Assembly: GCA_022605425.2 (NCBI GenBank)
Contig: JAKIMF020000001.1
Coordinates: forward strand, 248,001 to 312,000
Source of the DNA: Hamiltosporidium tvaerminnensis FI-OER-3-3
Taxonomy: Eukaryota > Fungi > Microsporidia
Reading direction: 5' to 3'
Length of the DNA: 64,000 nt
The position numbers were made by a program, and so were the translations under genes. Positions 3 through 32,496 of the stretch are shown here, in pieces. The notes under the pieces were generated by a model. It did not search any database. It was not told the DNA's origin and saw only the letters and a list, made by a program, of their open reading frames with translations. The number at the start of each line of letters is the position of its first letter. The first letter of the stretch is position 1.

Positions 3-3000
3 TTATCCAATAGTATGAATAACCCTCTTATATCTAATAGTATGTCTTACTCCTTTAATCCTAACACTACACAACATACTCCTATAACTAACACCCTTTA
101 TTCTTCTCCTTACTGTGTTAATACTTTACAGTTTAATTACTACTTTAACACCCTTAACTCTCTTATAAATAACACCCCTGTTATTATAGTAAAAGGTCCT
201 TTAAGTACAGGTAAATCTACTTTAGTAAAGAGTATAATAACACCCTTTAATCATAAGTATTATAATTTAAGAAATAACACTGATATAGACTTTTATAAAG
301 AATATAGAATAATAAAAGGTGTTAAAGTATATAAACCTGTTAATAGACTTATAATATGTATAGATGAATTTAATACCCCTGTTATCTCTAATAAGGTACA
401 AGAGAGTGTTAGAGAGTATTTAGAGTATAGAAGTATAGGGGGTGTTATTATAGAGAATGTAGTTATAATATGTATATATAACACTAGTGAGGGGGGTTAT
501 AGTAAAATGGAGGGTGTTGGTTATAGGGATATGTTAGAGGATGTTAGTAGGGATGTAGTAGAGGGTAACAGTTATAGGGATGTAATAGTGGGTGTTAGTT
601 ATAGGGATATGTTAGAGGGTGTTAGTAGGGATGTAGTAGAGGGTGTTAGTTATAGGGATATGTTAGAGGGTGTTAGTTATAGGGATATGTTAGAGGGTGT
701 TAGTAGGGATGTAGTAGAGGGTGTTAGTAATACTAGTAGTAATATAAAGGGTGTTAGTGATAAGTGTATTAGTATAGAGGGTGTTAGTTATAGTAGTAGT
801 AATATAAAGGGTGTTAGTATTAAGGGTACCGATATAGAGGGTCTTAATATAAGTACTAATGAACACCCTCTTACTAACAGTACTAATGGTGTTATTGATA
901 GACTCACTTCTAAAACCCCTTCTTTAATATTTCATCATCAAATAGACTTTAAGTATATAACAGGTGTTATTATAGAAAGAAGATTAAATAAGAATATAAG
1001 TAAAGAAATAAGAGGTTTTATTTATAATATAATTATTTTAAAAGGTAATTTATTAACACTTAATAGATTTATTGATAATTTAAGTATAGAAAGTGATATT
1101 AACAGGGAAATAGAGTTATTATTTAAAGGGTGTAGTATTAGTAATAAGGGTATGTTAGAGGGGGGTGTTAGTAATAAGGGTATGTTAGAGGGAGGTATTA
1201 GTAACAGTAGTATGTTAGAGGGTGTTAATTATAAGGGTAGTATGTTAGAGGGTGTTAGTAACAGTAGGGATATATTAGAAGGTGGTAATAAGGATATGTT
1301 AGAAGGTAGTAATAACGATATATTAGAAGGTAGTAGAGAGGGTGTTAATTATAAGAATAGTATTTATGAGGATATGAAGGGTGTTAGTACTAAGGATATA
1401 TTAAAGGGTGTTAAGGGGAAGGATGGATATGAGGGTGTTAGTGATAAAGATGGATTAGAGGGTGTTAACATAAGTACTGATACTTATCACCCTGTTAATA
1501 CTACTACTGATACTTATCACCCTGTTAATACTACTACTAATACTTATCACCCTGTTAATAACAATACAACTTATCACCCTGTTAATCATCTATATAATAC
1601 TCCTTATACTTATCACCCCTTTAACTATAATAACTATTCTCTTAAAGATAACATACTTTATTTATTAGCAAAGAAGAATGTTAGTATTATTTTAATAGGT
1701 AGTTATTTATCAGGTAAGACAACACTTATAAAAGAATGTTGTAATATTAAAGGTTATAATTTAAATATTATAGATAATAATTACAATAAATTAGAGGGTT
1801 ATAATAATAATAGGGTAGATATAGGTGAGGGTGAGGGTGTTAATGTAAAGAGTAGTGTATTAGAGGGTGTTAATGATAGAGGTAGTGGATTAGAGGGTGT
1901 TAGTGATAGAGGTAGTGTATTAGAGGGTGTTAATATAAAGAGTACTGTATTAGAGGGTGTTAATGATAGAGGTAGTAATATAGTTGGTGTTAATAACAGT
2001 GGTAGTAATCAACAGGGTGTTAATGTAAAGAGTAGTAATCAACAGGGTGTTAATGATAAAGGTAGTAATCAACAGGGTGTTAATATAAGTACCAATGGTT
2101 ATAGGGGTGTTAGTAATAGTACTAATGAACAACACCCCTTTAACAACACATCTAATAATATACCTGTTGTTAATCTTGTTAGTGATAAATTATTTTTAAA
2201 ACCTTTTGATATATTTACTAGTGTTATTGATAGTAAAGAGTATGGTAAGTATATATTTACAGTAAGTAACTTAAAAGGTGTTAGTGATACATTTATAAGT
2301 AGGTGTTATATTTTAGAGAATAGTGTTAGTAAGGAGAGTGTTAAGGATATTGGTAGTAATAACACCCCTATAACCAATAGTAATAACCGTAGTAATAACA
2401 CCCCTTTAACTAACATAAGTAATAACCGTAGTGATAACACCCCTATAACCAATAGTACTAATAACCTTAGTGATAACACCCCTTTAACCAATAGTACTAA
2501 TAACCGTAGTGATAACACCCCTTTAACTAACAATACTAATAATTGTAGTAATAACACCCCTTTAATCACCCCTTTAATCAACACTATCTCTACTTACCTC
2601 CTTATATCTAATACCCTGTTACTTACTAACCATTTACTTAATACTTATAACACCCTTAAGAATAGACATTCCTTTCTATTAACAGGTGTTAATAAGATAC
2701 TTTTATTTAAAGAAGAAGTAAATAATTTAAATATTTTATTAAAAGAGAAATGTTTAAGATTATCACAATTAAAGGTAGAAAGTACTAACAATATAACAGA
2801 TTTAATAAATGAAAAAGAAAAAGTAAATAACACTATAAAAGAGATAATTAGTGTTAATAAAGATATAAAGAATAACATATGTTATTCTTTAAGTAAAAGA
2901 AAAGTAATAAGTAAAGAAATAAAGGGTGTTAAAGATAATATAGATAGTGTTATTAGAGATATAAAGGGTGTTGATAAGAAGAGTGTTAGTGAGTTAAAGA

Positions 3001-6000
3001 GTATGAATAACCCACCTTTAGTTATTAAGAAGGTACTTAGTGGGGTAGTGGGGGTATTGGAGGGGGATAGTAGTATGATGGAGGGTTATAGTATGATGAT
3101 GGAGGGTGATAAGGGTTATAGTAGTAGTAGTATGATGGAGGGTGTTAAGGGAAGTAGGGATAGTAGTATGATTGAGGGTTATAGTAGTATGATGGAGGGT
3201 GTTAAGGGAAGTAGGGATAGTAGTATGATTGAGGGTTATAGTAGTATGATGGAGGGTGTTAAGGGTAGTAGTATGATGAAGGGTGTTAAGGGTTATAGTA
3301 TGATGGAGGGTGTTAAGGGAAGTAGGGATAGTAGTATGATGGAGGGTGTTAAGGGAAGTAGGGATAGTAGAGAGGATGATAAGGGTGTTAAGGGAAGTAG
3401 GGATAGTAGTATGATGGAGGGTTTTGAGGGAAGTAGGGATATAAAGGGTCTTAGTGAAGTTTATGATAAACAACAGGGTGTTAATGACAGTATTACTAAT
3501 ATAAAGGGTGTTAGTAAAAGTACTATTAAACAACAGGGTGTTAACATAAGTACTAATAAACAACGGGGTGTTAAGAGTAGAGAGTGGAGGGAGGTTATTA
3601 GTATAGTGAGAAGAGAGGATTTTATAGCAAGGATAGTAAATTATAGGGATTTATTAGAAGATGGATTAGAAGAGGGTGATATGTTAGAAGATGGATTAGA
3701 AGAGGAATTAGAGGGTGTTAGTGATAAGGATATATTGGAGGGTGTTAGTGATAGTAGTATGTTAGAGGGTGTTAGTGATAGTAGTATGTTAGAGGGTGTT
3801 AGTGATAGTAGTATGTTAGAGGGTGTTAGTGATAGTAGTATGTTAGAGGGTGTTAATGTCAATACTGATAATAACACCCCTTTAACTAACAATAGTAATA
3901 ACACCCCTTTAACTAACAATACCACTAACACCCCTTTAACAAACAATACCACTAACAATACCACTAATACCACTAACACCCCTTTAACTAACAATACCAC
4001 TAACACCACTAATACCACTAACACCCCTTTAACAAACAATACCACTAACAATACCACTAATACCACTAACACCCCTTTAACAAATAACCCCTTTACCCCT
4101 CTTATCCCTCTTGCTTATAAGGCTTCTACTGCTTGTGGTCCTTTATGTAAGTGGCTTTCTTCTACATTAGATTATATACAAATAACAAGTAAATTAAAAC
4201 CTTTTATAAAAGAACTTAAGAATATTAATAATAGTATTATTAATAATAAAAGGGTGTTAAATAATAAACAAGAGTGTCTTAAATTAAAAGAAGAAAAGGT
4301 TTTACAACTTAAAGAGGAATTAAGAGTTAAGAGTTGTAGTGTTATAACGTATGAGAAGGAAATGGAAGAAATAAAGGGTAGGATGTGTGTTATGGAGGAG
4401 TGTATAGGTGTTATGGAAGAGGAAGTAGGGAGATGGAGTGTAGAGATAGGATGTGTTAGAGATAAGGGGGGTAGTAATAGTAGTAGGGATAGGGGTAGTG
4501 TATTAGAGGGTGTTAATAACAGTATTGATGATTATAAGTGTAATAGTAGTAGGGATATGTTAGAGGGTAATAGTAGTAGGGATATGTTAGAGGGTAATAG
4601 TAGGGATATGTTAGAGGCTTTTATTAATAAGGATGGTAGTAGAGAGGGTGTTAATAATATGGAGTATGATTATAAGGGTGTTAGTAATAAAGACAGTAGT
4701 AGTGGTAATGAACAAAGGGGCTTTAACAACATCACTAATAATTATCACCCTCTTAACAACAGTACTAATAATTATCACCCTCTTAACAACAGTACTAATA
4801 ATTATCACCCTCTTAACAACAGTACTAATAACTATCACCCCTTTAATAACAGTACTACTGATATTAATATACCTTATCTTACTAACCTTTTAAATCTTCT
4901 TAATAATAACACTTATATGGATAATAGTGTTATTTCTTATATAAGAAATACTTATTATAAATTAAGAGGTGTTAGTAATATTAATACTAATGATTTAAAT
5001 ATTTTATTAGAAAATAAAAGGGTTATATATATATATGATAAAGAGGGTGTTATTACAAAGGAAGTAACAAGGAATAATAAGAAGATGAGGTGTAGTGTTA
5101 TTGGTAAGGGTAATAGTAGTGGGGGTATTAGTACTTATAGTGTTAGTAATAACTATAGTGGTAACACCCCTTTAGGTAGTAGTAATAATGATTATTGTGG
5201 TAACACCCCTTTAGGTAGTAGTAATAATGATTATTGTGGTAACACCCCTTTAGGTAGTAATAATAATAACTATAGTGGTAACACCCCTTTAGGTAGTAAT
5301 AATAATAACTATAGTGGTAACACCCCTTTAGGTAGTAATAATAATAACTATAGTGTTAACACCCCTTTAGGTAGTAGTAATAACTATAGTGTTAACACCC
5401 CTTTAGGTAGTAATAATAATAACTATAGTGTTAACACCCCTTTAGGTAGTAGTAATAACTATAGTGGTAACACCCCTTTAGGTAGTAGTAATAATGATTA
5501 TTGTGGTAACACCCCTTTAGGTAGTAGTAATAATGATTATTGTGGTAACACCCCCTTATCTAATATCCTTCATATTCTTAATACCTTTCTTGTTACTTCT
5601 ATGGATAATAACAACTATTTAACAGTAATTAACACTGCTATGTTACATAATATAGATATAATAATAACAGGGTGTTATTATTACTGTCCTTATATTTATT
5701 CACTTATAAAATATCAAATGACTGTAAAAGGTTTTAATGTTATTTTAATAGGAAAAGATAAAGAAGGGTGTTATGAAGGTATTTATAATATTATATATGA
5801 AGAGGGTGTTAGTGATTGTATAAGAGAAGTAATAAGTGAGGTATATAAAGGGGTGGATATAATAGAGAATATGTTAGAGAAGGGTGTTAGAGGCAGTAGG
5901 GATATTTTAGAGAAGGGTGTTAATGATAAGGATATGTTAGAGGGTAATGTAAAGGGTGTTAATGATAAGGATGATTTTAAAGAGGGTGTTAGTAACAGAT

Positions 6001-9000
6001 CAGATAAACAACAGGGTCTTAATGACAGTCCTAATACTTTACACCCTGTTAATGAACGTACTTATAAACAACAGGGTCTTAATAACAGTATATCTAATAT
6101 GAATACCTTTAACAATCTATCTACTATCAATACCTTTAACAATCTATCTACTATCAATACCTTTAATACCTCTGAGTCTTCTTTATTATCAGGTGTTATT
6201 TCTTTAGAAAATAACCTTTTATCTTTAATAAGTAATAATAATATGGAAATAAAAGGTGTTAAATCTATAATAGAGTGTAAGAGGGTGTTAGATATTAAAA
6301 GAAAAGAATTTAAAGAATTAAAGGATAGAAATAAAGAAATAAGAGATATTGAAAATAACATATGTTACTTATATGAAAGTATAAGAAAGTCTTATTATAG
6401 TAAATATAAGGTATATTTAAGTAATAAAGTATTTAAAGGGGTATTAAGATATATAATAAAGGGGGTAATAAAAGGTTTTAGTGAAAGGGTGTTATTAGAG
6501 GGTGTTAGTGAAAGGGAGTTATTAGAGGGTGTTAATGATAGGGAGTTATTGGAGGGTAATTTTGATAGGGAGTTATCTGAGGGTGTTAGTCATAGGGAGT
6601 TATTAGAGGGTGTTAATGAAAGGGAGTTATTAGAGGGTGTTAGTGATAGGGAGTTATTGGTGGGTGTTAATGAAAGGGAGTTATTAGAGGGTGTTAATGA
6701 AAGGGAGTTATTAGAGGGTGTTAGTCATAGGGAGTTATTAGAGGGTGTTAATGAAAGGGTGTTATTAGAGGGTGTTAATGAAAGGGAGTTATTAGAGGGT
6801 GTTAGTGATAGGGAGTTATTGGTGGGTGTTAATGAAAGGGAGTTATTGGAGGGTGTTAATGAAAGGGAGTTATTAGAGGGTGTTAGTCATAGGGAGTTAT
6901 TGGAGGGTGTTAATGATAAGAGTAGTAGTAGAGAGGGTGTTATCAACAGCACTGATAGATTAGAGGGTGTTAGTAAGAGTACTGATAGATTAGAGGGTGT
7001 TAGCAACAGTACTAATGAACAACACCCTGTTAGTAATAATACTACACAACACCCTGTTAATAACAATACTACACAACACCCTGTTAATAACAATACTACA
7101 CAACACCCTGTTAACACTAACCTAAATACTACTATAGCTAACACCCTCTTATCTTTCTATTCTTACTCTTATATGCCTGTTGATAGACAAAGGGTGTTAA
7201 ATTATAAAGAATTGAGAAATGAAATATTAAATATAGAATTACCTTTTAATTACCTGTTAATTAACTTAGATGTAACATTATTAAAATTAAAATGTGTTAG
7301 TGTTAGTTGTGGTAGTGAAGAGAATAATAAAAGGGTGTTAGATACTATAAATAGAGAGAGTATTTGTATTATTAAGAATGTACAGTTTATGCCAGAACTT
7401 AAGGATATGTGTAGTAATTATAGGGGTGTTAATTATAGTAGGGAGGTAGTAGGGGGTGGTAGTAGGGATATATTAGAGGGTGTTAATTATAAAGGTAGTG
7501 TATTAGAGGGTGTTAACAATAGTAGGGAGGTATTAGAGGGTGTTAATTATAAAGGTATTGTAGTAGGGGGTGTTAATTATAAAGATAGTGGATTAAAGGG
7601 TGTTAACAATAGTAGGGAGGTATTAGAGGGTGTTGGTTCTAGTACTAGCAAACAAGACCCTATTAATAGTAAGACTTACAAACAATACCCTTTTATTAGT
7701 AGTACTTATAAACAAGACCCTTTTAATAACACTACTAATAATTATCACCCTGTTAATAAGAGTACTAAACAACACCCCTTTAAAAGAGTCATTTACTGTA
7801 TGGAAGGTAACACACAACACTCTCTTATGGAGGATTGTAGAATAATTTATGGTGAACAAGAATATTCTTATAATAACATATATAAGACATATAGAGATAT
7901 AATAAGGGAAGAGGGTGTTAGTAATAGAAGTAAGGGATTAGAGAGGGGTGTTAGTAATAGAAGTAAGGGATTAGAGAGGGGTGTTAGTAATAGAAGTAAG
8001 GGATTAGAGAGGGGTGTTAGTAATAGAAGTAAGGGATTAGAGAGGGGTGTTAGTATAGTAGAGGGTAGAGAGGGGGGTGTTAATAGTAAGAAGAAGGGTG
8101 TTAGTAATGCAAGTATACGAGAAGGGGGTGTTAATATAGTAGAGGGTAAGAATAGGGGTGTTAATAGTAAGAAGAAGGGTGTTAGTAACAGTAATAAGTA
8201 TAAGGGTAGTAGATATAGGGGTGTTAATTATAAGACATTATCTATAAGAGGTGTTAATGATAAATCATTCTCTATAACACCCCTTAGTAATACATCTCCT
8301 CATATAACACCTCTTAGTAATACATTTCCTCATATAACACCTGTTAAAACTAAATCATTCTCTATAACACCCCTTATTAAGACATCTCCCCATATAACAT
8401 CTGTTAAAACCAAATCATACTCTATAACACCTGTTAGTAATACATCTCCTTATATAACACCTCTTAACACTAAATCATACTCTATAACACCTGTTAATAC
8501 TACTACCCTTTATTCTATACTTAAGTATTCCTTTATATATTCTTTAGAAATAAGATGTGTTATTTTACATTCTTATATATGTTATATCTCTTGTTATATT
8601 CCTTATACTTTAAGTTTTAATTATGAATGGTCTTTAAAAGATTTATTGTTATTTATAAGGTGTTGTAAGTATATGACATTTAAAGAGAGTATAGGTGTTG
8701 TGTATGGTAGTAGGTTAAGTTATAAAGAGGTTATTTGTATAGAAATAGTAGGTGATATAATAAAGGGGGGTGTTAGTAGTATGGATATAGTAGAGGAGGG
8801 TGTTAGTAGTAAGGATATAGTAGAGGGTGTTAGTAATAAGGATATAGTAGAGGAGGGTGTTAGTAGTATGGATATAGTAGAGGAGGGTGTTAGTTATAAG
8901 GATATAGTAGAGGGTGTTAGTTATAAGGATATAGTAGAGGGTGTTAGTAGTATGGATATAGTAGAGGAGGGTGTTAGTAGTATGGATATAGTAGAGTGTG

Positions 9001-9917
9001 TTAACAATAGTAGGGATATTAAGGAGGGGGGTGTTAGTAAAGGTAGTATGTTAGAGGGTGTTAGTAGTATGGATATAGTAGAGGGTGTTAACAATAGTAG
9101 GGATATTAAGGAGGGGGGTGTTAGTAAAGGTAGTATGTTAGAGGGTGTTAGTAGTATGGATATAGTAGAGGGTGTTAACAATAGTAGGGATATTAAGGAG
9201 GGGGGTGTTAGTTATAAGGATATAGTAGAGGGTGTTAGTAAAGGTACTAGTAATTATAAGGGTGTTATTAACAGTACTAATAAACAACACCCTGTTAACA
9301 ATATTACTGATACTTATCACCCTCTTAACGACAGTACTGATACTTATCACCCTGTTAACAACAGTACTGATAATACCCCCTCTTATACCTGGTTATTTAC
9401 TTACTATGATATTCTTAAGGATAAATTAAAAGGTAAAGAATATGAAATTATAAATAACAAGGAAATTACAAGTAAGAATAAGAAGGATAACAAGGATACT
9501 AACAAGGGATTGGATAGTCACGATATTAACAAGGGATTTATTAACAAGGAACTTACAAGTAAGTCTAACAAGGATACTAACAAGGATAACAAGGGACTCA
9601 TTAACAAGGAACTTACAAGTAATTATAACAAGGATATCAATGGATTCATTAACAAGGAACTTACTAGTAATGATATTAACAATCAATCTTGTAAATTATC
9701 ACCCTTTAGTATTAAGGTAAGATTCTATAAAGCTATAGTAGTAGAAGAGGGTGTTAATTATAGTAATATTGATAATGTATGTTATTTACTTATTAAAGAG
9801 GTTAATAGTAGTAATAAGAAGGAATGGGTTTGGGTTGTTAATAAAGGGGTGATAGATAAGGTATATGTAAGTAGTATAAAGGGGTGTTATTATAGTGTAG
9901 TGGGTGAAGTATTATAG
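3..9917 (+). CDS. DYN1: Cytoplasmic dynein heavy chain, C-terminal half (AAA3-AAA4-stalk/MTBD-AAA5-AAA6), 5'-truncated by the window edge, with massive low-complexity in-frame insertions
   Basis: Dynein motifs occur in the correct order between repeat blocks: GPLSTGKS and ICIDEFNTP (AAA3), LIGSYLSGKTTL (AAA4), LLTGVNKI, ELKSMNNPPLVIK / WREV..RREDFIARIVNY / KASTACGPLCKW (stalk MTBD), EEVGRW, IYDKEG and TSMDNNNY (AAA5), LENNLL, SCGSEE..IKNVQF (AAA6), YEWSLKDL, VYGSR. The frame is open from nt 3, so the ATG at 15 is probably not the true start. Confidence 0.85.
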   Translation, partial: LSNSMNNPLISNSMSYSFNPNTTQHTPITNTLYSSPYCVNTLQFNYYFNTLNSLINNTPVIIVKGPLSTGKSTLVKSIITPFNHKYYNLRNNTDIDFYKEYRIIKGVKVYKPVNRLIICIDEFNTPVISNKVQESVREYLEYRSIGGVIIENVVIICIYNTSEGGYSKMEGVGYRDMLEDVSRDVVEGNSYRDVIVGVSYRDMLEGVSRDVVEGVSYRDMLEGVSYRDMLEGVSRDVVEGVSNTSSNIKGVSDKCISIEGVSYSSSNIKGVSIKGTDIEGLNISTNEHPLTNSTNGVIDRLTSKTPSLIFHHQIDFKYITGVIIERRLNKNISKEIRGFIYNIIILKGNLLTLNRFIDNLSIESDINREIELLFKGCSISNKGMLEGGVSNKGMLEGGISNSSMLEGVNYKGSMLEGVSNSRDILEGGNKDMLEGSNNDILEGSREGVNYKNSIYEDMKGVSTKDILKGVKGKDGYEGVSDKDGLEGVNISTDTYHPVNTTTDTYHPVNTTTNTYHPVNNNTTYHPVNHLYNTPYTYHPFNYNNYSLKDNILYLLAKKNVSIILIGSYLSGKTTLIKECCNIKGYNLNIIDNNYNKLEGYNNNRVDIGEGEGVNVKSSVLEGVNDRGSGLEGVSDRGSVLEGVNIKSTVLEGVNDRGSNIVGVNNSGSNQQGVNVKSSNQQGVNDKGSNQQGVNISTNGYRGVSNSTNEQHPFNNTSNNIPVVNLVSDKLFLKPFDIFTSVIDSKEYGKYIFTVSNLKGVSDTFISRCYILENSVSKESVKDIGSNNTPITNSNNRSNNTPLTNISNNRSDNTPITNSTNNLSDNTPLTNSTNNRSDNTPLTNNTNNCSNNTPLITPLINTISTYLLISNTLLLTNHLLNTYNTLKNRHSFLLTGVNKILLFKEEVNNLNILLKEKCLRLSQLKVESTNNITDLINEKEKVNNTIKEIISVNKDIKNNICYSLSKRKVISKEIKGVKDNIDSVIRDIKGVDKKSVSELKSMNNPPLVIKKVLSGVVGVLEGDSSMMEGYSMMMEGDKGYSSSSMMEGVKGSRDSSMIEGYSSMMEGVKGSRDSSMIEGYSSMMEGVKGSSMMKGVKGYSMMEGVKGSRDSSMMEGVKGSRDSREDDKGVKGSRDSSMMEGFEGSRDIKGLSEVYDKQQGVNDSITNIKGVSKSTIKQQGVNISTNKQRGVKSREWREVISIVRREDFIARIVNYRDLLEDGLEEGDMLEDGLEEELEGVSDKDILEGVSDSSMLEGVSDSSMLEGVSDSSMLEGVSDSSMLEGVNVNTDNNTPLTNNSNNTPLTNNTTNTPLTNNTTNNTTNTTNTPLTNNTTNTTNTTNTPLTNNTTNNTTNTTNTPLTNNPFTPLIPLAYKASTACGPLCKWLSSTLDYIQITSKLKPFIKELKNINNSIINNKRVLNNKQECLKLKEEKVLQLKEELRVKSCSVITYEKEMEEIKGRMCVMEECIGVMEEEVGRWSVEIGCVRDKGGSNSSRDRGSVLEGVNNSIDDYKCNSSRDMLEGNSSRDMLEGNSRDMLEAFINKDGSREGVNNMEYDYKGVSNKDSSSGNEQRGFNNITNNYHPLNNSTNNYHPLNNSTNNYHPLNNSTNNYHPFNNSTTDINIPYLTNLLNLLNNNTYMDNSVISYIRNTYYKLRGVSNINTNDLNILLENKRVIYIYDKEGVITKEVTRNNKKMRCSVIGKGNSSGGISTYSVSNNYSGNTPLGSSNNDYCGNTPLGSSNNDYCGNTPLGSNNNNYSGNTPLGSNNNNYSGNTPLGSNNNNYSVNTPLGSSNNYSVNTPLGSNNNNYSVNTPLGSSNNYSGNTPLGSSNNDYCGNTPLGSSNNDYCGNTPLSNILHILNTFLVTSMDNNNYLTVINTAMLHNIDIIITGCYYYCPYIYSLIKYQMTVKGFNVILIGKDKEGCYEGIYNIIYEEGVSDCIREVISEVYKGVDIIENMLEKGVRGSRDILEKGVNDKDMLEGNVKGVNDKDDFKEGVSNRSDKQQGLNDSPNTLHPVNERTYKQQGLNNSISNMNTFNNLSTINTFNNLSTINTFNTSESSLLSGVISLENNLLSLISNNNMEIKGVKSIIECKRVLDIKRKEFKELKDRNKEIRDIENNICYLYESIRKSYYSKYKVYLSNKVFKGVLRYIIKGVIKGFSERVLLEGVSERELLEGVNDRELLEGNFDRELSEGVSHRELLEGVNERELLEGVSDRELLVGVNERELLEGVNERELLEGVSHRELLEGVNERVLLEGVNERELLEGVSDRELLVGVNERELLEGVNERELLEGVSHRELLEGVNDKSSSREGVINSTDRLEGVSKSTDRLEGVSNSTNEQHPVSNNTTQHPVNNNTTQHPVNNNTTQHPVNTNLNTTIANTLLSFYSYSYMPVDRQRVLNYKELRNEILNIELPFNYLLINLDVTLLKLKCVSVSCGSEENNKRVLDTINRESICIIKNVQFMPELKDMCSNYRGVNYSREVVGGGSRDILEGVNYKGSVLEGVNNSREVLEGVNYKGIVVGGVNYKDSGLKGVNNSREVLEGVGSSTSKQDPINSKTYKQYPFISSTYKQDPFNNTTNNYHPVNKSTKQHPFKRVIYCMEGNTQHSLMEDCRIIYGEQEYSYNNIYKTYRDIIREEGVSNRSKGLERGVSNRSKGLERGVSNRSKGLERGVSNRSKGLERGVSIVEGREGGVNSKKKGVSNASIREGGVNIVEGKNRGVNSKKKGVSNSNKYKGSRYRGVNYKTLSIRGVNDKSFSITPLSNTSPHITPLSNTFPHITPVKTKSFSITPLIKTSPHITSVKTKSYSITPVSNTSPYITPLNTKSYSITPVNTTTLYSILKYSFIYSLEIRCVILHSYICYISCYIPYTLSFNYEWSLKDLLLFIRCCKYMTFKESIGVVYGSRLSYKEVICIEIVGDIIKGGVSSMDIVEEGVSSKDIVEGVSNKDIVEEGVSSMDIVEEGVSYKDIVEGVSYKDIVEGVSSMDIVEEGVSSMDIVECVNNSRDIKEGGVSKGSMLEGVSSMDIVEGVNNSRDIKEGGVSKGSMLEGVSSMDIVEGVNNSRDIKEGGVSYKDIVEGVSKGTSNYKGVINSTNKQHPVNNITDTYHPLNDSTDTYHPVNNSTDNTPSYTWLFTYYDILKDKLKGKEYEIINNKEITSKNKKDNKDTNKGLDSHDINKGFINKELTSKSNKDTNKDNKGLINKELTSNYNKDINGFINKELTSNDINNQSCKLSPFSIKVRFYKAIVVEEGVNYSNIDNVCYLLIKEVNSSNKKEWVWVVNKGVIDKVYVSSIKGCYYSVVGEVL

Positions 9918-10320
9918 GAGTAGTAGTAGGGAATAAAGGGTGTTATTGTATTTAGGAGTAGTAGTGATAAGAGGGTGTTATAGTATATTAGGAGTAGTAG
10001 TAGTGATAAGAGGGTGTTATAGTATTAAGGAGTAGGAGTTGGGAATAAAGGGTGTTATGGTATTATAGGAGTAGTGGTAGTAGTAGGGAATAAAGGGTTT
10101 TATAGTATTATAGGAGTAGTAGTAGTAGTAGGGAATAAAGGGTTTTATAGTATTATAGGAGTAGTAGTAGTAGTAGCAGGGATAAGAGGGTTTTATTGTA
10201 GTAGTGATTAGTAGTAGGTATAAGAGGGTGTTATAGTACTAGGGAATAGCACTAGGAAGTAGAAGGTGTTAACTATTAGTTTGGTATAATAGGGTGTTAG
10301 GTATATAAATAGGTGTTAAT
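9918..10320 (+). repeat. Degenerate AAGGGTGTTAT/AGTAGTAG minisatellite continuing past the dynein stop codon
   Basis: Repeated units such as AAGAGGGTGTTATAGTATT..GGAGTAGTAG of variable, non-triplet length, with the same core as the coding repeats. Confidence 0.85.
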
Positions 10321-10431: not shown

Positions 10432-11800
10432 TAGGGTTTTTCGATCAATATAATAATTATTTTGAAAAAAAAATTCATTCATAATAAAATTTACTCCTAT
10501 GTCAAATTCTTTTTCAGGTAAAAATACCAACGAGGACAAATATGATTTTCATGTAATGTGAAACACCGGAATGTATAGAGTGCTAAAATTACAATGTTTT
10601 GAAGTGTCTTGTGTAAAAATCTGGATCACATGATAAAAATCTCCCATTATCCACCATTCCAACTCTGAGGAAACAAATGGTTTCTATTAATGATCGGGAA
10701 TGCATAATTGAAAAAAACATTAGAAGGCTATTCTATGTCCGCAATTTCCTCTAATTATCGAATAAATTACCAGACGGCTAATAGTATCGTTAGACGATAT
10801 CTAAAAACCGGCTTAGGTATTTGTCGAGAAAAGAGGTGGTGATAGGGCGATCAAAGTTAACTTTGGAAATAAAAGAGAGCTTACAAACCTATGGAAATTT
10901 TGAGCGTAAAAAACCCTCTATGAGTTGGCAGAATGGGTTAAATGTACATTTTATGTTGATGTGTCAACTAGTACAATTGATCGCGCACTAAGGGAGTTAC
11001 ATTACACTCTAAAGCGTGTAACATTAGTGCCTGAGCGTAGAAATACACTTTCGACAATTGAGCTAAGAACCAATTACGCAACTAGTTTTCGTGAGTTGGA
11101 GGTTGATAACGATGACAAAAACTTTGTCTTTTTAGATGAAGTTGGGTTCGCAGTAGTAACACGCCCCAGTAGAGGTCGTAATATGAGAAGTGAATCTGCA
11201 TACTTATCTGCAACAGCAGCCCGAAGTAGAAATATTTCAGAAGTGTCGGCAATGAACAAATATGGTATGATATACCATAAGATTCATGAGAGGGCCATAA
11301 ATGATGAGGATTTCAAATTATTCTTTAAGGATATTCATTTAAGTTGTCAACGGCAAGGAATTTTGACTTCAATATTAGTAATGGACAATGCGAGAATTCA
11401 TCACTATCAGGGATTGAATGATGATGAGGAATTTTCTCGTATCGAATAAAATATCTTCCACTTTACTCTCCATTTCTTAATCCAATTGAGAATATATTCT
11501 CAGTCTGAAAAAATAGAGTAATTCGAGGTGGTGCTCGTACTGAGTCTCAGTTGAGAATATTAATTTGTGAAAAATTTAATGAGATCACGGGAGAACATTG
11601 TAGTTCTTTTTACCGTAAAATGTTAGGATATTTGCAAATGGCTGAAGTAGGGCAAGTGATTCTTGAATAATAAATCTCCAGTACTATTTATAATCAGTTT
11701 TTCAAATTTCTATTTTTCAAATTTTTATTTTATAAATTGTTTTTTTAAAAATGATTATTATATTTATTGCAATGATTATTATATTGATCGAAAAACCCTA
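10432..11800 (+). mobile_element. Tc1/IS630-family (DD34E) DNA transposon, disrupted transposase
   Basis: TIRs TAGGGTTTTTCGATCAATATAATAAT (10432) and its reverse complement ending at 11800, flanked by TA. Transposase motifs FVFLDEVGF, VMDNARIHH and YSPFLNPIE are split by stops and frameshifts. Confidence 0.92.
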
Positions 11801-15216: not shown

Positions 15217-17022
15217 ATGAGTCTGGTTTTTTGGATTTACATTGTAAGTTGTTCTCGTGTGATAAATATTATAAGAAACGGCAGCAGATTTCGAAACCTG
15301 CATCGAAGTAATTGTTTCACATCTTTATCTAAGAACGAATTGAGTGCTAATGAAAGGTCGAATATTTATGAAACAAAAAAACCAGCATCTTTAGCAGCAA
15401 AGAAAATTGATCCCGTGTATAAAAGCCTTCATGAAATCAAATTATTACATAAAAATGTTACGGAAAATAGAAATTTTATACCTAGTGACAATGAAAGGAT
15501 TTTACCTTATTTGAGATTTAATATTAAATGCATTTTAAAGAAGGAACGTAAAAATAGTAAAAACTATCTTGAAGATTGTGATTTTGAGAATCACTTCCTT
15601 AAGGTAGCCTATCCAACCCGTTTATATGTAGAAAAGGATTTGGATCTTTATAATTCGTCTACTAAAGAACTTTTTAGAAGGAAAAGGAGTGTTTCTATTA
15701 AGCCGAAGATATTATCAAAAATGATAAATACGTTTTTTGAAAAAAGTCAAGATGAGTCATTTAATCTCAGCAATAGAAATGCTTATGATTTTTTTGATTT
15801 TAAAAAAAGTGAAACACTGATGAATATTAAGAATGTTATTAGAGATACTGAAAATCGTTTGGCGCAAAATGGTACATCAGATTCTTTAAAATGGGCAAGA
15901 TTTTTTCAAGATTCGGAAATAGAGAACCTTTTTATTTTTTATTTGCTATTAGTTAAATATTCAAATGAAAAACAAAATATGGATGAATTTTTGTCGAAAA
16001 ATAATCTTGACTTGGATGTGATTCAGTCTAAAATTGCGGAGATTAAAAGTTGTCATTTTGATGGTTTTGATTTTACGGAGACTTTGGATTTGAATTTTTA
16101 TGATTATAACTATTTTTTTGACGCATCTTCAGAATTTTATGAAGATAGTTTAAAACTTTTGGCAAAAAACTTTCAAGCTATAAATTATGATCAATTTGGA
16201 AATATGAACGAATCATTCCTGAGCGAAGATAAATTTAATGAAGTTTTCAAGAAAAAAATATATGATCATAAGATTCCATTAGATTTTTTAACTTGCATTC
16301 GAATAAAAAAAGAAACCACTAATATTTTGATTAAAAGACTATTTTTGGAAGTCCAAACTGTAAAGATGATAATGAAATTGTATGATACCTTATTTTTGGT
16401 TTATTCATATCAAAGAACACAGATGGATTATGTCATAGTGGCTAATTTTATAATATTTTTTGCAAAAGATATTGTAAAACTTTTTGAACACGAAAAAAAC
16501 GAACTGACAGTATTTCTTACGCTGATCTGCAATTTAAGAAATTTTTCATTATCCTGTGCTGAAATAGCGAGTTTTTCAGATAAACCGGTTAAAACATATG
16601 TAAACCTATCTGTTATAGCGATGTTTTCACAACTTAAAATTGAAGACCAGAATGATGCTGTTATCGTTGATTTAAAAAATGAAATTTCAAGGAATTTCTT
16701 TGTTAGTTTTCTTTATAGCCAATCTAATTGGTTAAATAATATTTCAAGATTTTACGGAACAGGATACAACTTTTTTTATGAATTCAAATTTATTGAGCAT
16801 CTATTATGTCGTCAATATGGTATTTCTTATCTAAAAGGTGAATGTTATTATTATAATTTATTAATGTATCTACTAGATAATAATATATTCATTTCTGACA
16901 TATTTGACAGAGATGAACTTCTCTACGTAGCAAGGTCACTTCGTTCAAATAATGCATTTGGTAATACTTCTAAAGAATGTAGTGAATTAATACGCATAAT
17001 TGAGTATTTTTTAAAAGTCTGA
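15217..17022 (+). CDS. Lineage-specific 601-aa protein ('gene A'), possibly secreted; paralog of 54973-56784
   Basis: Long ORF, short hydrophobic N-terminus MSLVFWIYIVSCS, RRKRS polybasic site, CC motif just before the ATG, and a near-identical intact paralog. Confidence 0.85.
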   Translation: MSLVFWIYIVSCSRVINIIRNGSRFRNLHRSNCFTSLSKNELSANERSNIYETKKPASLAAKKIDPVYKSLHEIKLLHKNVTENRNFIPSDNERILPYLRFNIKCILKKERKNSKNYLEDCDFENHFLKVAYPTRLYVEKDLDLYNSSTKELFRRKRSVSIKPKILSKMINTFFEKSQDESFNLSNRNAYDFFDFKKSETLMNIKNVIRDTENRLAQNGTSDSLKWARFFQDSEIENLFIFYLLLVKYSNEKQNMDEFLSKNNLDLDVIQSKIAEIKSCHFDGFDFTETLDLNFYDYNYFFDASSEFYEDSLKLLAKNFQAINYDQFGNMNESFLSEDKFNEVFKKKIYDHKIPLDFLTCIRIKKETTNILIKRLFLEVQTVKMIMKLYDTLFLVYSYQRTQMDYVIVANFIIFFAKDIVKLFEHEKNELTVFLTLICNLRNFSLSCAEIASFSDKPVKTYVNLSVIAMFSQLKIEDQNDAVIVDLKNEISRNFFVSFLYSQSNWLNNISRFYGTGYNFFYEFKFIEHLLCRQYGISYLKGECYYYNLLMYLLDNNIFISDIFDRDELLYVARSLRSNNAFGNTSKECSELIRIIEYFLKV

Positions 17023-23911: not shown

Positions 23912-24063
23912 ATTTATTTTTCTGTGTAAATATCCATCAATTGTTTATACATTATTTAGTTCTTTTTATAGGTATCAGTTTATAATTATTTATTTTTCTG
24001 TGTAAATATCCATCAATTGTTTATACATTATTTAGTTCTTTTTACAGGTATCAGTTTATAATT
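23912..24063 (+). repeat. 76-bp tandem duplication (2 copies)
   Basis: TCTGTGTAAATATCCATCAATTG at 23921 and 23997. Confidence 0.9.
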
Positions 24064-24089
24064 ACTTATTTACTTATAAAAGTAATCTT

Positions 24090-24136: not shown

Positions 24137-24280
24137 TATAATTACTTATTTACTTATAAAAGTAATCTTTAATATTTATTTTTTATATAGATAATTGTCT
24201 AATTATAATCTATTAAATTACAATTTAATTTAGTTAATATATTTATAATAATATATCATATGATTCAATTGTTTTAAAAT

Positions 24281-24746
24281 TTTATGTCCAAATTTATAAG
24301 ATAAAATATTAAATAAAAAAATTACTTTTTTCTACATAATTCTTATTTGATATTTAATTTTATGTCCAAATTTATAAGATAAAATATTAAATAAAAAAAT
24401 TACTTTTTTCTACATAATTCTTATTTGATATTTAATTTTATGTCCAAATTTATAGATAAAATATTAAATAAAAAAATTACTTTTTTCTACATAATTCTTA
24501 TTTGATATTTAATTTTATGTCCAAATTTATAGATAAAATATTAAATAAAAAAATTACTTTTTTCTACATAATTCTTATTTGATATTTAATTTTATGTCCA
24601 AATTTATAGATAAAATATTAAATAAAAAAATTACTTTTTTCTACATAATTCTTATTTGATATTTAATTTTATGTCCAAATTTATAAGATAAAATATTAAA
24701 TAAAAAAATTACTTTTTTCTACATAATTCTTATTTGATATTTAATT
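24281..24746 (+). repeat. 77/78-bp tandem array, 6 copies
   Basis: TTTATGTCCAAATTTATA(A)G.. starts at 24281, 24359, 24437, 24514, 24591 and 24668. Confidence 0.95.
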
Positions 24747-27388: not shown

Positions 27389-27730
27389 AAATAATTTAAG
27401 TAAAATTATAAGTTTATTCTATTTTAAATAATTTAATCTGGTATTTCTTTAAAAATTATTTAGATTATTTAATATTTAAACACGTCTAATATATAATTTT
27501 TCAAGAGATACAGATTAAATTATCTTTTTTAAAAATTATATTTGATTTATTAATATATATTAGACTCAATTAAATAGTAATAATCAAATTTAATTAAATC
27601 TGTATAATCTTGTGTGTCTTTATTAATTATATTTGATTTATTAATATTTTCTTTATCTTTTTATTACAATTTAATATTTTGAAGAATTAAAATAATATCT
27701 CTTAGTATATTATTTAACTTAAAATCCCTT

Positions 27731-28188
27731 TTTATAATAGAATAAGTAAATCATCAAAATCCAAATTATAAATTTACATCCAATTCGTTACAAAATAAAA
27801 CCAAATTTTATAATAGAATAAGTAAATCATCAAAATCCAAATTATAAATTTACATCCAATTCGTTACAAAATAAAACCAAATTTTATAATAGAATAAGTA
27901 AATCATCAAAATCCAAATTATAAATTTACATCCAATTCGTTACAAAATAAAACCAAATTTTATAATAGAATAAGTAAATCATCAAAATCCAAATTATAAA
28001 TTTACATCCAATTCGTTACAAAATAAAACCAAATTTTATAATAGAATAAGTAAATCATCAAAATCCAAATTATAAATTTACATCCAATTCGTTACAAAAT
28101 AAAACCAAATTTTATAATAGAATAAGTAAATCATCAAATCTCGATTATAAATTTACATCCAATTAGTTACAAAATAAAACTAAATTTT
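27731..28188 (+). repeat. 76-bp tandem array, 6 copies
   Basis: TTTATAATAGAATAAGTAAATCATCAAAATCC.. recurs every 76 bp; the last copy is degenerate. Confidence 0.95.
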
Positions 28189-28514
28189 AAATTTGAGTTA
28201 ATTTTAAGATAAATTTAAAGATTTTTTTTTACTTTTACCATTTCATTATTCTTAAATTTTATTTTTTAAAAAACAAAGATTTAATTAAATTCTATTTACA
28301 ATAGCTAAGTATTATTTTAATTATTCTATAAATATATTTTAACTTTGATATTAGTAATCTAATTTTCTTTTATTTTGTAATTAGATTATATAAATATTTA
28401 AGAATTTATTTTTATATTTCAAAAATATTAATAAATATTCAAGATTTAAGAATTTATTTTGTAATTAGAAATGCAAAGAAAATATAAAGAAATAAAATAT
28501 AAAAAATATAAGAC

Positions 28515-29241: not shown

Positions 29242-29340
29242 ATTAAAAAATTAAATTTCTATTTTTATTAATAATTGAATTTCAAAAAATTTTTACTGAC
29301 ATATTTTAAAAAAAAAAACGTTAAAATATTTTCCCCAGAA

Positions 29341-32303
29341 ATGAGCGATACTTCTATTGATAAGCCACTTCTTGTTTCAATCGAACTTAAAAATTTTATG
29401 TGTCACAAGCATTTATTTATAGAATTTAACAAAATGATGACTTGTATCGGTGGTAGAAATGGAAGTGGAAAAAGTGCAATTATGATAGCCATAGGTCTAT
29501 TATTTGGACAACGAGCTTATTCATTAGAAAGAGGAAACAGTTACAAAAATTTAATAAAAGATGGAGAAATAAATGCAAAAATACGAGTTGTTTTAAGAAA
29601 TATTAAAAATTATAAAAGATCGTTTTTTAAAGATTTTATAATTATTGAAAAGCGACTTAGAAAAGATTCTGCGCCTTTAAGTATTTACAATTTAAAAAAT
29701 AATTTATTTTCAAGTAAAAAAGAAGATTTGGATTATATTTTAGATTTATTTTCTCTTAGACTTGACAATCCGTTAAATTTTCTGACACAAGAGCAATCTA
29801 AAAAATTTTTAAATATTTCTAAACCAGAACTGTTGTATTCTTTATTTACCAAAGGTACTGAATTAGAGGATATGACAGATTTACATGTAGAAACAGAAAA
29901 TAATATTTTACAGATGAAACAAAAGATTGACATGTCAACATTACAATTAAAAAAACTTCTTGATGAACAAAAAATTAAGACAAATTGTTTAGAAGCGATT
30001 TATAAGACAAAGGAATACGAAAATAAATTAAAAAATTTAGAATCAGAAAAAGAGTGGTCCAGGTTTGAAAAAAAAAATATTCAAATTATTGAGAAAGAAA
30101 GAAATATAAAAGAAATTACAGAAAATATTTGTGAATTTGAAAATGAAAAAAATAATTTTATTAAAGAATTGGATTTTTTAATTGAAGATATAGAAAATAC
30201 CAAACAAGAACGAGAAAGATTTAAAAGAAAACATCAAACAGAAGTAACGAATTGTGAAAATAAATTAAATAATTTAGAATTACAAAATAGAGAAATAAGC
30301 AACGATTTAAATTTTTTAGAAGAAAATTTAAATAATAAAATTTTAAAGAAAAACGAAATGAATGAAAATATTTCTAAATATTTAAATTCTGATGACAAGA
30401 GAGTTGAAAAAGATATAAAAAATAAAAAAAATAAAATTTTAGAATTTGAAAAAGATTTTGAAAAACTTTTAGAAATAAAAAATGAAGCTTTAGAAGAAGA
30501 AAAAAAGTGTTTTGAAGCTGTAAATTTAGAAATGAGAAGAGTATTAATGAACAAAATAATAAAATTTTTCAATTAAAAAATCAAATTTCGTATTTTGAAA
30601 AAGTTGAAAAAAATTTGATATCTTTTTTTAATGAAAATATGCCAAATATAATGAATGAAATAAAATCTTTAAAAACAAAAGACCGTATTATTGGACCAAT
30701 AGGGTTATATATACAACTTAAAGAACATAAATGGTACAAACCTGTCAGTATTATTTTAAAAGATATTATTAGTAGTTTTATTGTTTTTAATTCAGAGGAT
30801 AGAGAATCCTTAAATAATATTTTTAAAAAATATAATTACAGTGGTTCTATTCTATTACCTTCTTTAAAAAATAATAAAGAAATAAAATTTGAAGAAAATA
30901 AAAAATTTAAAACAGTTTTAAATGTTTTAAATATTAAAGAAACGGTTGTTTTAAATCAATTAATTATTTTTTCAAATATTGAACAAATAATTTTAATTGA
31001 ATCTAGAAAAGAAGCGTATTCTGTTATTAAAAGTATGCCTTTAAATGTAGATAGTGCTTATACAATAGAAGGTGACAGAATTAAAATGTTTAGAAATAGT
31101 TTATCAGATTATCGACCAAGAAATTCAAATAAATTTTATTTTGAAAATTCTTCATTTAAAATTGAAAATTTGAAAGACGAATTAAAAAATTTAAAAAAAA
31201 CTGAAATAAAAAAATCAGCAGAAGAAGATCTAAAAAAAGTAAAAAAATTAATTATGGATACATTTAAACGGATAGATGACTTAGAAAAGAATAAAAGAAA
31301 TATTTTATCAGAACTTAAATGTATAGAATCTGTTCAAAGCAATAAAGAAAATATAAAAGATGATTTTGAAAATTTAGATGAAGAAATTGAAAGATTAAAA
31401 ACACAGAAGAAACATCTTTCTTTGAAACTTTCTGATATTAAAAATGAAATAGAAAATTGTAAAAATGAAATTTGTAAATTGAAAGAAATAAATTTTAATG
31501 AAACTCAAGACACAAACAAAATAATAAATACGAAAAGATTGGAGATACAACTGATAGATTCAAAAATTTCTTCAACAAAATTTAAACTTCAAGATATTTT
31601 TAATGAAAAATATACACTTGAAATTCAACTTGAGAAGGAAAAAGAAATATTAAAAAGTAAATATAAAGAAATTTGTAATCCTAGAAATTTAGAAGAAATA
31701 ATTGAAGAGGAAAATATTGTTTTAGCAAATCTTCAAATTTCTAAAAATTCTGGTATTGAAACTGAAATAAAAAAAGATTTGATTCAAATAAATAAAAAAA
31801 TAAAATTTAATCAAAAAATTATTTCAAATTATGAATCTAAAATTTTTAAATTGTCTGAATGTATGAAGAAACGAATTGAAAAACGAGAAGCTTTAAAAAT
31901 TACTATTTCTGAACAAGCATCAATTAAATTTGAAGAACTCACGGCACAAAGAAAATGTATTGGAAAACTTTTTTTTAATCACGACGAAAAAAAACTTGAA
32001 GTCACCATGAAAATAGACAATACAGTGTCTGGTGGTTCAAAAAATACACTTTCAGGTGGAGAACGTTCATATTCAGGTATTTGTCTTCTCTTAAGTTTCT
32101 GGTCATTTCTAAGTTGTCCAATTAAAATTTTAGATGAATTTGATGTTTATATGGATAATATTACAAGAAAATATGCTATAAGAAGTTTATTAGAATTTCT
32201 CTCTGAAAAAAACAGCCAAGTAATTTTAATTACCCCTTTAAATACCAAAGATCTTTTTTCTGAATTCTGTGAAATTATTGTTTTAGAATCACCAAGAAAA
32301 TAA
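29341..32303 (+). CDS. SMC6: Structural maintenance of chromosomes protein 6, with a 1-nt frameshift near 30530
   Basis: LKNFMCH, Walker A GRNGSGKSA, NPLNFLTQE, hinge IGPIG, signature LSGGERSYS, Walker B ILDEFDVYMD. The ATG at 29341 follows CCCC. Adding one A at TTAGAAATGAGAAG joins the two ORFs. Confidence 0.93.
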
Positions 32304-32435: not shown

Positions 32436-32496
32436 CCTCAATTCTAAACTGTATTAATCTAAGAAATATTTCATTAAATTTATTCATACAAAACCT

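What the first reader, a model, noticed from the sequence alone, without database searches (positions are those of the whole stretch)
490..9380. Dynein heavy chain invaded by polar, self-complementary in-frame repeat cassettes
Seen: about a dozen low-complexity blocks interrupt recognisable dynein sequence without breaking the frame. They are built from one DNA core in two orientations, GAGGGTGTTA (read EGVS/EGVN) and TAACACCC/CACCCTGTTA (read NTPL, HPVN or ITP, i.e. in different frames). Most blocks have the same polarity, with G-rich units first and C-rich units after (e.g. ~1130-1470 then 1480-1620; 3650-3860 then 3870-4110; 6480-7010 then 7020-7150; 7910-8260 then 8270-8510; 8760-9270 then 9285-9380), so each block could fold back on itself. 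Inference: this is a DNA- or RNA-level element rather than a selected peptide repeat. It could be a coding palindromic element analogous to Rickettsia palindromic elements, a fold-back segment removed from the mRNA by non-canonical processing, or the product of a templated repeat-addition process.
Basis: partly seen in the sequence, partly recalled or inferred. Interest (0 to 1): 0.9.

Follow-up and report, generated by a model that had tools for sequence, protein, structure and literature searches.

The report
Polar octamer repeats inflating microsporidian dynein
In a water-flea parasite, one eight-letter DNA motif has multiplied into direction-biased repeat blocks that more than double the length of dynein and many other essential proteins and has even been written into their conserved parts; the blocks appear to be translated rather than cut out, and what drives them is still open.

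Summary
Confirmed. The window is the 3' 40% of the Hamiltosporidium tvaerminnensis dynein heavy chain (about 7,900 aa; 3,050-3,350 in other microsporidia). Thirteen blocks make up 60% of the ORF. They belong to a genus-specific, genome-wide family built on GGGTGTTA (6,387 copies against 288 control). G-before-C order holds in 85 of 100 mixed blocks.

It is a DNA-level element that is almost certainly translated: 0 stops in 1,994 block codons; 67/71 coding units are 3n and stop-free against 4/53 non-coding; allele indels are 3n. Excision is unlikely but not directly tested, because no parasite RNA reads were available. The arms are not true inverted copies: exact pairing is 13 nt at most and own-arm pairing barely beats foreign arms.

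Single octamers are also written into alignable protein sequence in all three frames. The polarity matches the known fungal gene-end skew, so each block looks like a miniature intergenic stretch. The cause is inferred, not shown. The scan noted this family before on other DNA of this genome; the literature notes only MCM expansions.

The parts
15..9917 (+). 3' part of the dynein heavy chain ORF (AAA3, AAA4, stalk with microtubule-binding domain, AAA5, AAA6 region, C-terminus). The gene starts about 13.8 kb upstream of the window; total about 23.7 kb, about 7,900 aa
1..250 (+). C-type tail of a block that begins upstream, grading into conserved AAA3 sequence
490..880 (+). Block: G-type 27/30-nt units with a short C end near 860
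1128..1640 (+). Bipartite block, G to C switch near 1480 (30-nt units)
1800..2180 (+). Block: G-type 30-nt units, C end near 2120
2355..2590 (+). C-only block, 39-nt units read as NTPL/NTPI
3060..3590 (+). G-only block of about 165 aa between helices H2 and H3 of the microtubule-binding domain; predicted disordered
3650..4110 (+). Bipartite block (switch near 3870), about 150 aa in place of the 20-30 aa that orthologues have before helix H6; best-folding block (z -8.5); predicted disordered
4470..4900 (+). Bipartite block, switch near 4725
5130..5570 (+). C-only block, about 10.7 copies of a 39-nt unit
5870..6170 (+). Block with G units followed by a C-skewed tail
6470..7150 (+). Bipartite block, 16 copies of a 27-nt G unit, switch near 7020
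7420..7790 (+). Bipartite block, switch near 7650
7905..8510 (+). Bipartite block, 33-nt G units, switch near 8270, C units read as ITP
8760..9390 (+). Bipartite block, switch near 9285
9918..10320 (+). G-type array after the stop codon, with periods 38/45/74 and stops in all frames; shows that the motif does not need a reading frame
2622..4454 (+). Stalk and microtubule-binding domain: six isolated core hexamers written into gap-free alignable sequence, mostly at residues that differ from the orthologue consensus

Best explanation
The blocks are a Hamiltosporidium-specific minisatellite family (units mostly 27-39 nt) organised around the octamer GGGTGTTA, a quasi-palindromic, telomere-like core. 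They stay in the mRNA and are translated as disordered loops. Arrays grow and shrink by whole units (shown), and selection removes frameshifts and stops (shown). The G-then-C order is not a designed hairpin. It is the centre of a strand-symmetric field: on either strand, sequence gains G, loses C and gains the octamer as it runs 5' to 3' towards a block junction, including at synonymous and replaceable positions of the conserved protein (shown). Most likely cause (inferred): the octamer is the site of a telomere-type or general-regulatory DNA-binding protein. Its arrays make each block behave like a small intergenic, promoter/terminator-like stretch, which then experiences the strand-biased process that makes fungal genes C-rich at the 5' end and G-rich at the 3' end. 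New sites and local template switches (GGG/CCC flips) feed the arrays, and weak selection in this bottlenecked parasite lets the protein inflation persist. The translated DNA-level part is about 85% likely; the named cause of polarity is about 45-50%.
For: Translation: 0 stops in 1,994 block codons against 164 and 623 in the other frames. 67/71 distinct coding units are 3n and stop-free against 4/53 non-coding, p 7e-25. 26 of 31 allele or paralogue indels are 3n; of the other five, two lie after the stop and three are single extra bases in this assembly that H. magnivora lacks. Blocks fall at loop positions, two of them shared with unrelated inserts in Conglomerata Rpa2. AlphaFold builds the stalk and binding domain around two disordered inserts. 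Field: 4-fold sites in inter-block segments are C85:G19 in the first quarter and C9:G39 in the last, p 1e-13, with no gradient in control genes; the C gradient persists at residues conserved with orthologues (p 1.4e-4). Octamers in inter-block coding: 38 and 21 against 4.3 and 1.4 expected from synonymous shuffles; in gap-free alignable runs, hexamers 15 and 10 against 6.0 and 2.3. A and T stay level while G and C swap, as in the fungal gene-end skew (PMC3315797). Non-coding arrays are mostly C-rich before starts and G-rich after stops. A CCC-like motif precedes microsporidian start codons (PMC2803860). Literal telomere hexamers occur in blocks with the same polarity.
Against: No binding protein was identified; 15 Myb-domain matches in the genome are only candidates. 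There are no transcription-start, nucleosome or RNA data for the blocks. AATAAA is depleted in blocks, so they are not internal polyadenylation sites. Many housekeeping genes (AspRS, Rad50) have neither blocks nor a gradient, and why only some genes are affected is unexplained. The gene-end rule has exceptions: the TERT coding start is G-rich, RPL34 and CBP20 have C-rich arrays on both sides, and Rpa2 has no flanking arrays. Own arms resemble each other slightly more than foreign arms in inverted orientation (p 0.004-0.01), which points to some fold-back exchange. Inter-block segments were drawn by hand, and at strictly conserved residues the G gradient alone is not significant (p 0.25).
Confidence: 0.5

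Rival explanations
1. Break-centred writing: block junctions are recurrent DNA break sites. Both 3' ends gain G-strand repeats (telomerase-like addition, or synthesis templated on other arrays) and are rejoined head-to-head, while resection-linked strand-biased mutation and conversion spread the skew and single octamers into the flanks. The blocks are still translated.
For: G-then-C is the head-to-head telomere-fusion order. The telomere repeat is TTAGGG and TERT is present. Short telomere-hexamer tracts occur in blocks with matching polarity, once as a small G-then-C pair. Blocks are hypervariable and GC-richer (0.35 against 0.26). The skew drops sharply at junctions and recovers gradually. 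Telomeric insertion at breaks is known in vertebrates (PMC7215372).
Against: The core is not the telomere repeat, and the 27-39-nt units are too diverse for one RNA template. Most junctions keep a direct 30-nt register instead of an inversion. A exceeds T in both arms, which simple inverted addition would not give. Allele differences are whole-unit gains and losses on one side, not new G+C cassettes. The SNP spectrum was too small to test.
Confidence: 0.25
2. The blocks are retained in the mRNA but selected as RNA fold-back structures (G arm pairing with C arm) that affect stability or translation rate.
For: 38 bipartite blocks fold better than shuffles, median z -2.3 (whole block) and -2.8 (arm-wise); one reaches z -8.5. 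There is a slight own-arm preference.
Against: Swapping the arm order changes folding by 0.0 kcal/mol on average, so folding cannot explain the polarity. Own arms pair only about 1.6 kcal/mol better than foreign arms, p 0.085 within genes. G-only and C-only blocks exist, arm lengths vary independently between alleles, and the arrays also lie between genes. No Rfam match.
Confidence: 0.1
3. The blocks are removed, either from the RNA by non-canonical processing or ribosome bypass, or from the protein like inteins (the possibility raised for MCM in PMC6944219).
For: Inserts are very large and sit inside the microtubule-binding domain and the polymerase core; some replace short conserved stretches. 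This assembly has frameshifts inside blocks. No RNA test was possible.
Against: Strict 3n and stop-free constraint. Three checked frameshifts are absent from the H. magnivora contig. The Iso-Seq study confirmed only 17 introns of about 20-70 nt, and the NCBI Rpa2 model from this assembly keeps all five blocks. There are no defined ends, no GT-AG, no intein domain in Pfam, and the blocks grade into conserved codons.
Confidence: 0.06
4. Selection for the peptide repeats (acidic G-arm peptide followed by an Asn/Thr/Pro/His C-arm peptide).
For: G units are mostly read in one frame (107 of 116).
Against: The same DNA core is read in three frames, occurs outside ORFs, and shapes synonymous sites. 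It appears in unrelated proteins (dynein, PI4-kinase, Rpa2, E1, Sec7, Ski2, TAF1, polymerase delta). The frame preference follows from stop avoidance.
Confidence: 0.04
5. A mobile palindromic cassette like the Rickettsia palindromic elements or a MITE.
For: In-frame insertion in many unrelated genes at tolerant sites; partial self-complementarity.
Against: No fixed length, terminal inverted repeats or target-site duplication was seen at the three inspected blocks. Blocks differ in unit and length, half-blocks exist, and the signal extends into flanking codons.
Confidence: 0.04

Closest known systems
Asn-rich in-frame expansions of Hamiltosporidium MCM proteins (Haag et al., PMC6944219)
   Same: Same genus; in-frame low-complexity expansions splitting conserved motifs; intein versus tolerated loop left open there. 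Probably the same family, but MCM was not examined here.
   Different: That paper calls MCM the only clear case and gives no DNA motif, polarity, synonymous field or genome-wide extent.
Opposite GC skew at 5' and 3' ends of fungal genes (McLean and Tirosh, PMC3315797) and the microsporidian CCC/GGG-like start motif (PMC2803860)
   Same: Coding strand C-rich at starts and G-rich at ends, A and T level, effect at 4-fold sites and on amino-acid use.
   Different: Here the cycle repeats about 13 times within 10 kb of one ORF, reaches skews near +1 and -1, is tied to one octamer and to tandem arrays, and is absent from block-free genes.
Core-sharing hypervariable minisatellites and low-complexity loop inserts of AT-rich parasites such as Plasmodium (own knowledge)
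   Same: Tandem units with a shared G-rich core, copy-number variation between alleles, in-frame location in loops.
   Different: Convergent orientation within each array, and spread of the core as single copies into conserved codons.
Bacterial DNA uptake sequences in coding regions (Findlay and Redfield, PMC2817400)
   Same: A short motif in thousands of copies, written into genes in several frames, raising particular peptides at poorly conserved residues.
   Different: Eukaryote with no known uptake system; motif is clustered, tandem and oriented instead of dispersed; the driver is unknown.
Interstitial telomeric sequences, including head-to-head fusions (PMC7215372)
   Same: G-then-C order, telomere-like core, occasional literal telomere hexamers.
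   Different: The dominant core is not TTAGGG, units are long and diverse, and the arrays are coding.
Rickettsia palindromic elements (review PMC10969869)
   Same: In-frame insertion into unrelated housekeeping genes of an intracellular parasite, apparently compatible with folding.
   Different: RPEs are discrete units of about 150 bp with a conserved peptide; these are tandem, variable (200-700 nt), blurred at the edges and only weakly palindromic.

Membership tests
Coding minisatellite / low-complexity loop insert | Head-to-tail units of 10-60 nt | tested here: met
   Periods 27-39 and multiples
Coding minisatellite / low-complexity loop insert | Copy-number variation in whole, frame-keeping units between alleles | tested here: met
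   Rpa2, dynein and PI4-kinase comparisons
Coding minisatellite / low-complexity loop insert | Located in loops while the host fold is kept | tested here: met
   Alignments and a predicted model only
Coding minisatellite / low-complexity loop insert | Present in the mature mRNA and protein | tested here: inconclusive
   No parasite reads in two RNA runs; indirect support from frame constraint and the Iso-Seq paper
Rickettsia palindromic element / MITE | Discrete unit of conserved length and sequence at unrelated loci | tested here: not met
   Blocks differ in unit, length and arm content
Rickettsia palindromic element / MITE | Long palindrome or terminal inverted repeats with target-site duplication | tested here: not met
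   Longest exact inverted match 8-13 nt; none seen at three inspected block ends
Rickettsia palindromic element / MITE | In-frame insertion in unrelated genes | tested here: met
Spliced intron (canonical or not) | No constraint on frame or stops inside the element | tested here: not met
Spliced intron (canonical or not) | Reads that skip the element | tested here: inconclusive
   RNA runs held no parasite reads
Intein | HINT splicing domain and conserved terminal residues | tested here: not met
   No such Pfam match; inserts predicted disordered
Interstitial telomeric sequence | Tracts of the species' own telomere repeat | tested here: not met
   Telomere is TTAGGG; blocks hold only occasional 2-3 unit tracts and none in this window
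Interstitial telomeric sequence | One-step insertion relative to an empty orthologous site | not testable with these tools
   All Hamiltosporidium alleles seen carry the blocks and no close outgroup DNA was available
Fungal gene-end GC skew | C bias at 5', G bias at 3', visible at 4-fold sites, A/T level | tested here: met
   Met per inter-block segment, not per gene
Fungal gene-end GC skew | Coincidence with transcription starts and ends | not testable with these tools
   No RNA end data; AATAAA is depleted in blocks
Uptake-sequence-like motif drive | Strong genome-wide excess of one motif, written into coding sequence in several frames | tested here: met
   22-fold over control; three frames
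Uptake-sequence-like motif drive | A known motif-specific machinery that biases inheritance | not testable with these tools
   Only unassigned Myb-domain candidates

The most novel reading that the evidence does not exclude
A eukaryotic, self-reinforcing motif drive: a motif-specific protein or repair pathway writes an oriented octamer and a G/C strand bias into DNA around each array, strongly enough to rewrite synonymous and amino-acid positions of core genes and to inflate them 1.3- to 2.5-fold. It would be a polar, tandem counterpart of bacterial uptake-sequence accumulation, and I found no description of one in the papers searched.
Probability: 0.3. Interest if true: 0.85.

Novelty: new variant of a known kind. 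Interest (0 to 1): 0.62.

Why it matters
Microsporidia are the textbook case of protein shrinkage, yet here a dynein of about 7,900 aa and many essential enzymes are inflated by one DNA motif. The finding answers, indirectly, a question left open in print (intein versus tolerated loop). It explains fragmented gene models, spurious predicted introns and assembly frameshifts in this genus. It also offers an extreme, repeated, within-gene version of the unexplained fungal gene-end GC skew, which makes its cause testable: if blocks carry transcription starts or a protein footprint, the skew is tied to chromatin or transcription boundaries; if they carry break or conversion peaks, it is tied to repair. 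A dynein with two 150-aa inserts in its microtubule-binding domain is also a natural test of motor tolerance.

Tried and rejected
RNA test: no RNA run was indexed as holding the stretch. Two raw RNA runs gave zero reads, so nothing was tested. The two holder runs behave as deep DNA; their listed joints connect block to block, as expected from cross-mapped repeats. A homologue search for the stalk region found nothing. Rfam gave nothing. Pfam found only weak AAA hits and no intein domain. The internal polyadenylation idea was rejected. Frameshifts as evidence of excision were rejected for three of the four upstream breaks; the one near L032:6760 was not checked. Hairpin selection as the source of polarity was rejected by arm swapping. 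The substitution spectrum was too small and unpolarised. Literature searches on hotspot skew gave nothing usable. Searches failed and were rerun.

Full report
Source and gene. The genome has 21,638,905 bases in 17 contigs, matching the published Hamiltosporidium tvaerminnensis assembly in size and contig lengths (PMC10542269). A block-bearing gene from it hits H. tvaerminnensis Rpa2 at 96-98%. Window 15-9917 is one frame of 3,300 codons that matches dynein stalk and microtubule-binding sequences. A profile of 12 dynein homologues, mostly microsporidian, aligns in eight collinear pieces. The frame continues upstream; the gene starts about 13.8 kb before the window and spans about 7,900 codons, against 3,050-3,350 for other microsporidia.

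The observation. Thirteen blocks cover 60% of the ORF. GGGTGTTA and its complement are confined to the first 10.4 kb of the window, yet occur 6,387 times in the genome against 288 for the reversed control, in clusters. Sampled clusters include PI4-kinase, RNA polymerase I subunit 2, a Mon2-like protein, ubiquitin proteases and E1 (some names are my reading of the sequences). A search of 1.84 billion proteins with one block gave 63 hits. All 16 looked-up proteins that carry the motif family are from H. tvaerminnensis or H. magnivora (Sec7, Ski2, TAF1, polymerase delta and others); the other looked-up hits lack it or are unrelated repeats, and other microsporidian dyneins lack it. Mixed blocks run G then C in 85 of 100 cases, and adjacent junctions in 57 of 74. 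This order reads the same on both strands.

Anatomy. Units are mostly 27, 30, 33 or 39 nt. The core is a quasi-palindrome, AACA-NNN-TGTT, with GGG or CCC in the middle and almost no intermediates (158 and 69). At 51 of 57 junctions the first C unit follows the last G unit in direct 30-nt register, so many C units are loop-flipped direct repeats, while NTPL and ITP units look like true inversions. Across a block G falls from about 0.33 to 0.04 and C rises from 0.02 to 0.28, while A stays above T on both sides. Arms are therefore not mirror copies: the longest exact inverted match is 8-13 nt. Blocks fold better than shuffles (median z -2.3 and -2.8; -3.3 and -8.5 for two window blocks), but arm order makes no difference, and own arms pair only slightly better than foreign arms (p 0.03 overall, 0.085 within genes). 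Own arms are slightly more alike in both direct and inverted orientation (p 0.002-0.02), which suggests local template switching.

Translated, not excised. The reading frame has no stop in 1,994 block codons, while the other two frames have 164 and 623. Of distinct units, 67 of 71 in the ORF are 3n and stop-free, against 4 of 53 in non-coding arrays. Between isolates, species and paralogues, 26 of 31 indels are 3n; two of the rest lie after the stop codon and three are single extra bases in this long-read assembly that the H. magnivora contig lacks, where the dynein N-terminus reads through in one frame. The Iso-Seq study confirmed 17 introns, all about 20-70 nt, and the NCBI Rpa2 model from this assembly keeps every block. 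In alignments the blocks fall at loop positions; two Rpa2 sites also carry unrelated inserts in Conglomerata. Some blocks replace short conserved stretches. AlphaFold gives the stalk and binding-domain helices high confidence with two low-confidence inserts, and the model matches dynein structures. A direct test failed: the RNA runs held no parasite reads. Retention is therefore strongly inferred, not shown.

A field around each block. GC skew over the ORF is a sawtooth: it drops from about +1 to -0.5 or lower at junctions and climbs back through the conserved segment. At 4-fold sites of inter-block segments in four genes, C:G is 85:19 in the first quarter and 9:39 in the last (p 1e-13); control genes show no gradient. 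At Rpa2 residues shared with orthologues the C gradient remains (21/110 against 6/147, p 1.4e-4), while G alone is not significant. The octamer is also present as single copies in inter-block coding sequence, 38 and 21 against 4.3 and 1.4 expected after synonymous shuffling, in all three frames, with the C form concentrated just after C arms. In gap-free alignable runs the excess holds, some copies using synonymous choices at conserved residues and many at changed residues. Segment limits were set by hand, so the stricter tests carry the weight. Outside ORFs the arrays lose 3n spacing; they are mostly C-rich before starts and G-rich after stops on the sense strand, with exceptions.

Mechanism. 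Shown: a DNA-level family, whole-unit length change, selection for frame, and an oriented field of skew and motif. Inferred: its cause. The pattern per segment equals the pattern per gene in unicellular fungi, C-biased 5' ends, G-biased 3' ends and level A/T (PMC3315797), and the C form resembles the CCC-like motif before microsporidian start codons (PMC2803860). I therefore favour arrays of a protein-bound motif that make each block act like a small intergenic stretch (overall confidence 0.5). No binding protein is identified, and blocks are poor in AATAAA. The main rival is break-centred writing (0.25): the order is that of a head-to-head telomere fusion, telomerase is present and short telomere tracts occur in blocks, but the direct register, the diverse units and the A/T symmetry fit it poorly. 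Selected RNA hairpins (0.1), excision (0.06), peptide selection (0.04) and a mobile cassette (0.04) are weaker.

Known and new. Haag et al. noted Asn-rich in-frame expansions in Hamiltosporidium MCM proteins and left intein versus loop open (PMC6944219). I found no paper describing the motif, the polarity, the synonymous field or the extent. The element is a coding minisatellite by the features tested; it is not an RPE, intron, intein or interstitial telomere by membership. It resembles bacterial uptake sequences in rewriting proteins (PMC2817400), though no driving machinery is known. The scan had already noted the family on other DNA of this genome; those notes were leads only, and one of them prompted the comparison with fungal gene-end skew.

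Limits. Only 20 genome regions could be read, chosen by a G-type motif. One upstream frameshift remains unchecked. Verdict: real, genus-wide, a new variant of known kinds with an unexplained directional driver; interest 0.62.

Noticed in passing
window 9470-9680: In-frame repeat of a different type (12/24/48-nt periods, NKD/NKE/NKG peptides) that lacks the octamer; it varies by 3 and 48 nt in H. magnivora.
   Followed up: partly
L031:7400-9610 and L032:6760 (upstream of the window): Four frame breaks in the dynein gene of this assembly; three are single extra bases absent from the H. magnivora contig, so probably assembly errors.
   Followed up: partly
L054 (G000:C4:418794-422159): The telomerase reverse transcriptase gene has a G-then-C block directly before its start codon but no octamer in the coding sequence examined, and its coding start is G-rich.
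   Followed up: partly
L045:3100-8000: Small conserved genes (RPL34, CBP20 and a short ORF; names from my reading) are separated by long non-coding octamer arrays with 29-31 and 38-40 nt spacing, close to three and four helical turns.
   Followed up: partly
L043, L044, L033, L034: Short telomere-hexamer tracts inside in-frame inserts (read as NPNP/TLTL), nearly always in C orientation on the sense strand; L034:3730-3780 is a small G-then-C pair.
   Followed up: partly
L035 and L036 (G000:C1, about 1.169 and 1.267 Mb): Two near-identical, oppositely oriented PI4-kinase copies about 95 kb apart whose blocks differ by 57 and 60 nt; a duplication or two assembled alleles.
   Followed up: partly
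window 15217-17022 (+) and 54973-56784 (-): Two close paralogues of an unknown secreted-looking protein of about 600 aa, with no Pfam match.
   Followed up: no
window 29275-32303: Rad50/SMC-like gene split into two ORFs (433 and 562 aa); possible frameshift or assembly error; no octamer blocks.
   Followed up: no
window 43056-46817: Intact 1,253-aa ORF with a reverse transcriptase domain (non-LTR-like element).
   Followed up: no
window 10925-11449: Fragment resembling a Tc1/IS630-type transposase just after the dynein 3' array.
   Followed up: no
window 24278-24746, 27730-28189, 23912-24071, 32496-32696: Very AT-rich, near-perfect 76-77 nt tandem arrays unrelated to the octamer family.
   Followed up: no
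window 39717-41084 and 59824-60285: Class II tRNA synthetase (Asp/Asn/Lys type) and a TAF9-like gene: housekeeping genes that carry no blocks, so the family does not affect all core genes.
   Followed up: partly
P0101 (Conglomerata obtusa Rpa2): Asn-rich inserts at two of the same Rpa2 sites, without the octamer peptides, marking these loops as insertion-tolerant.
   Followed up: partly
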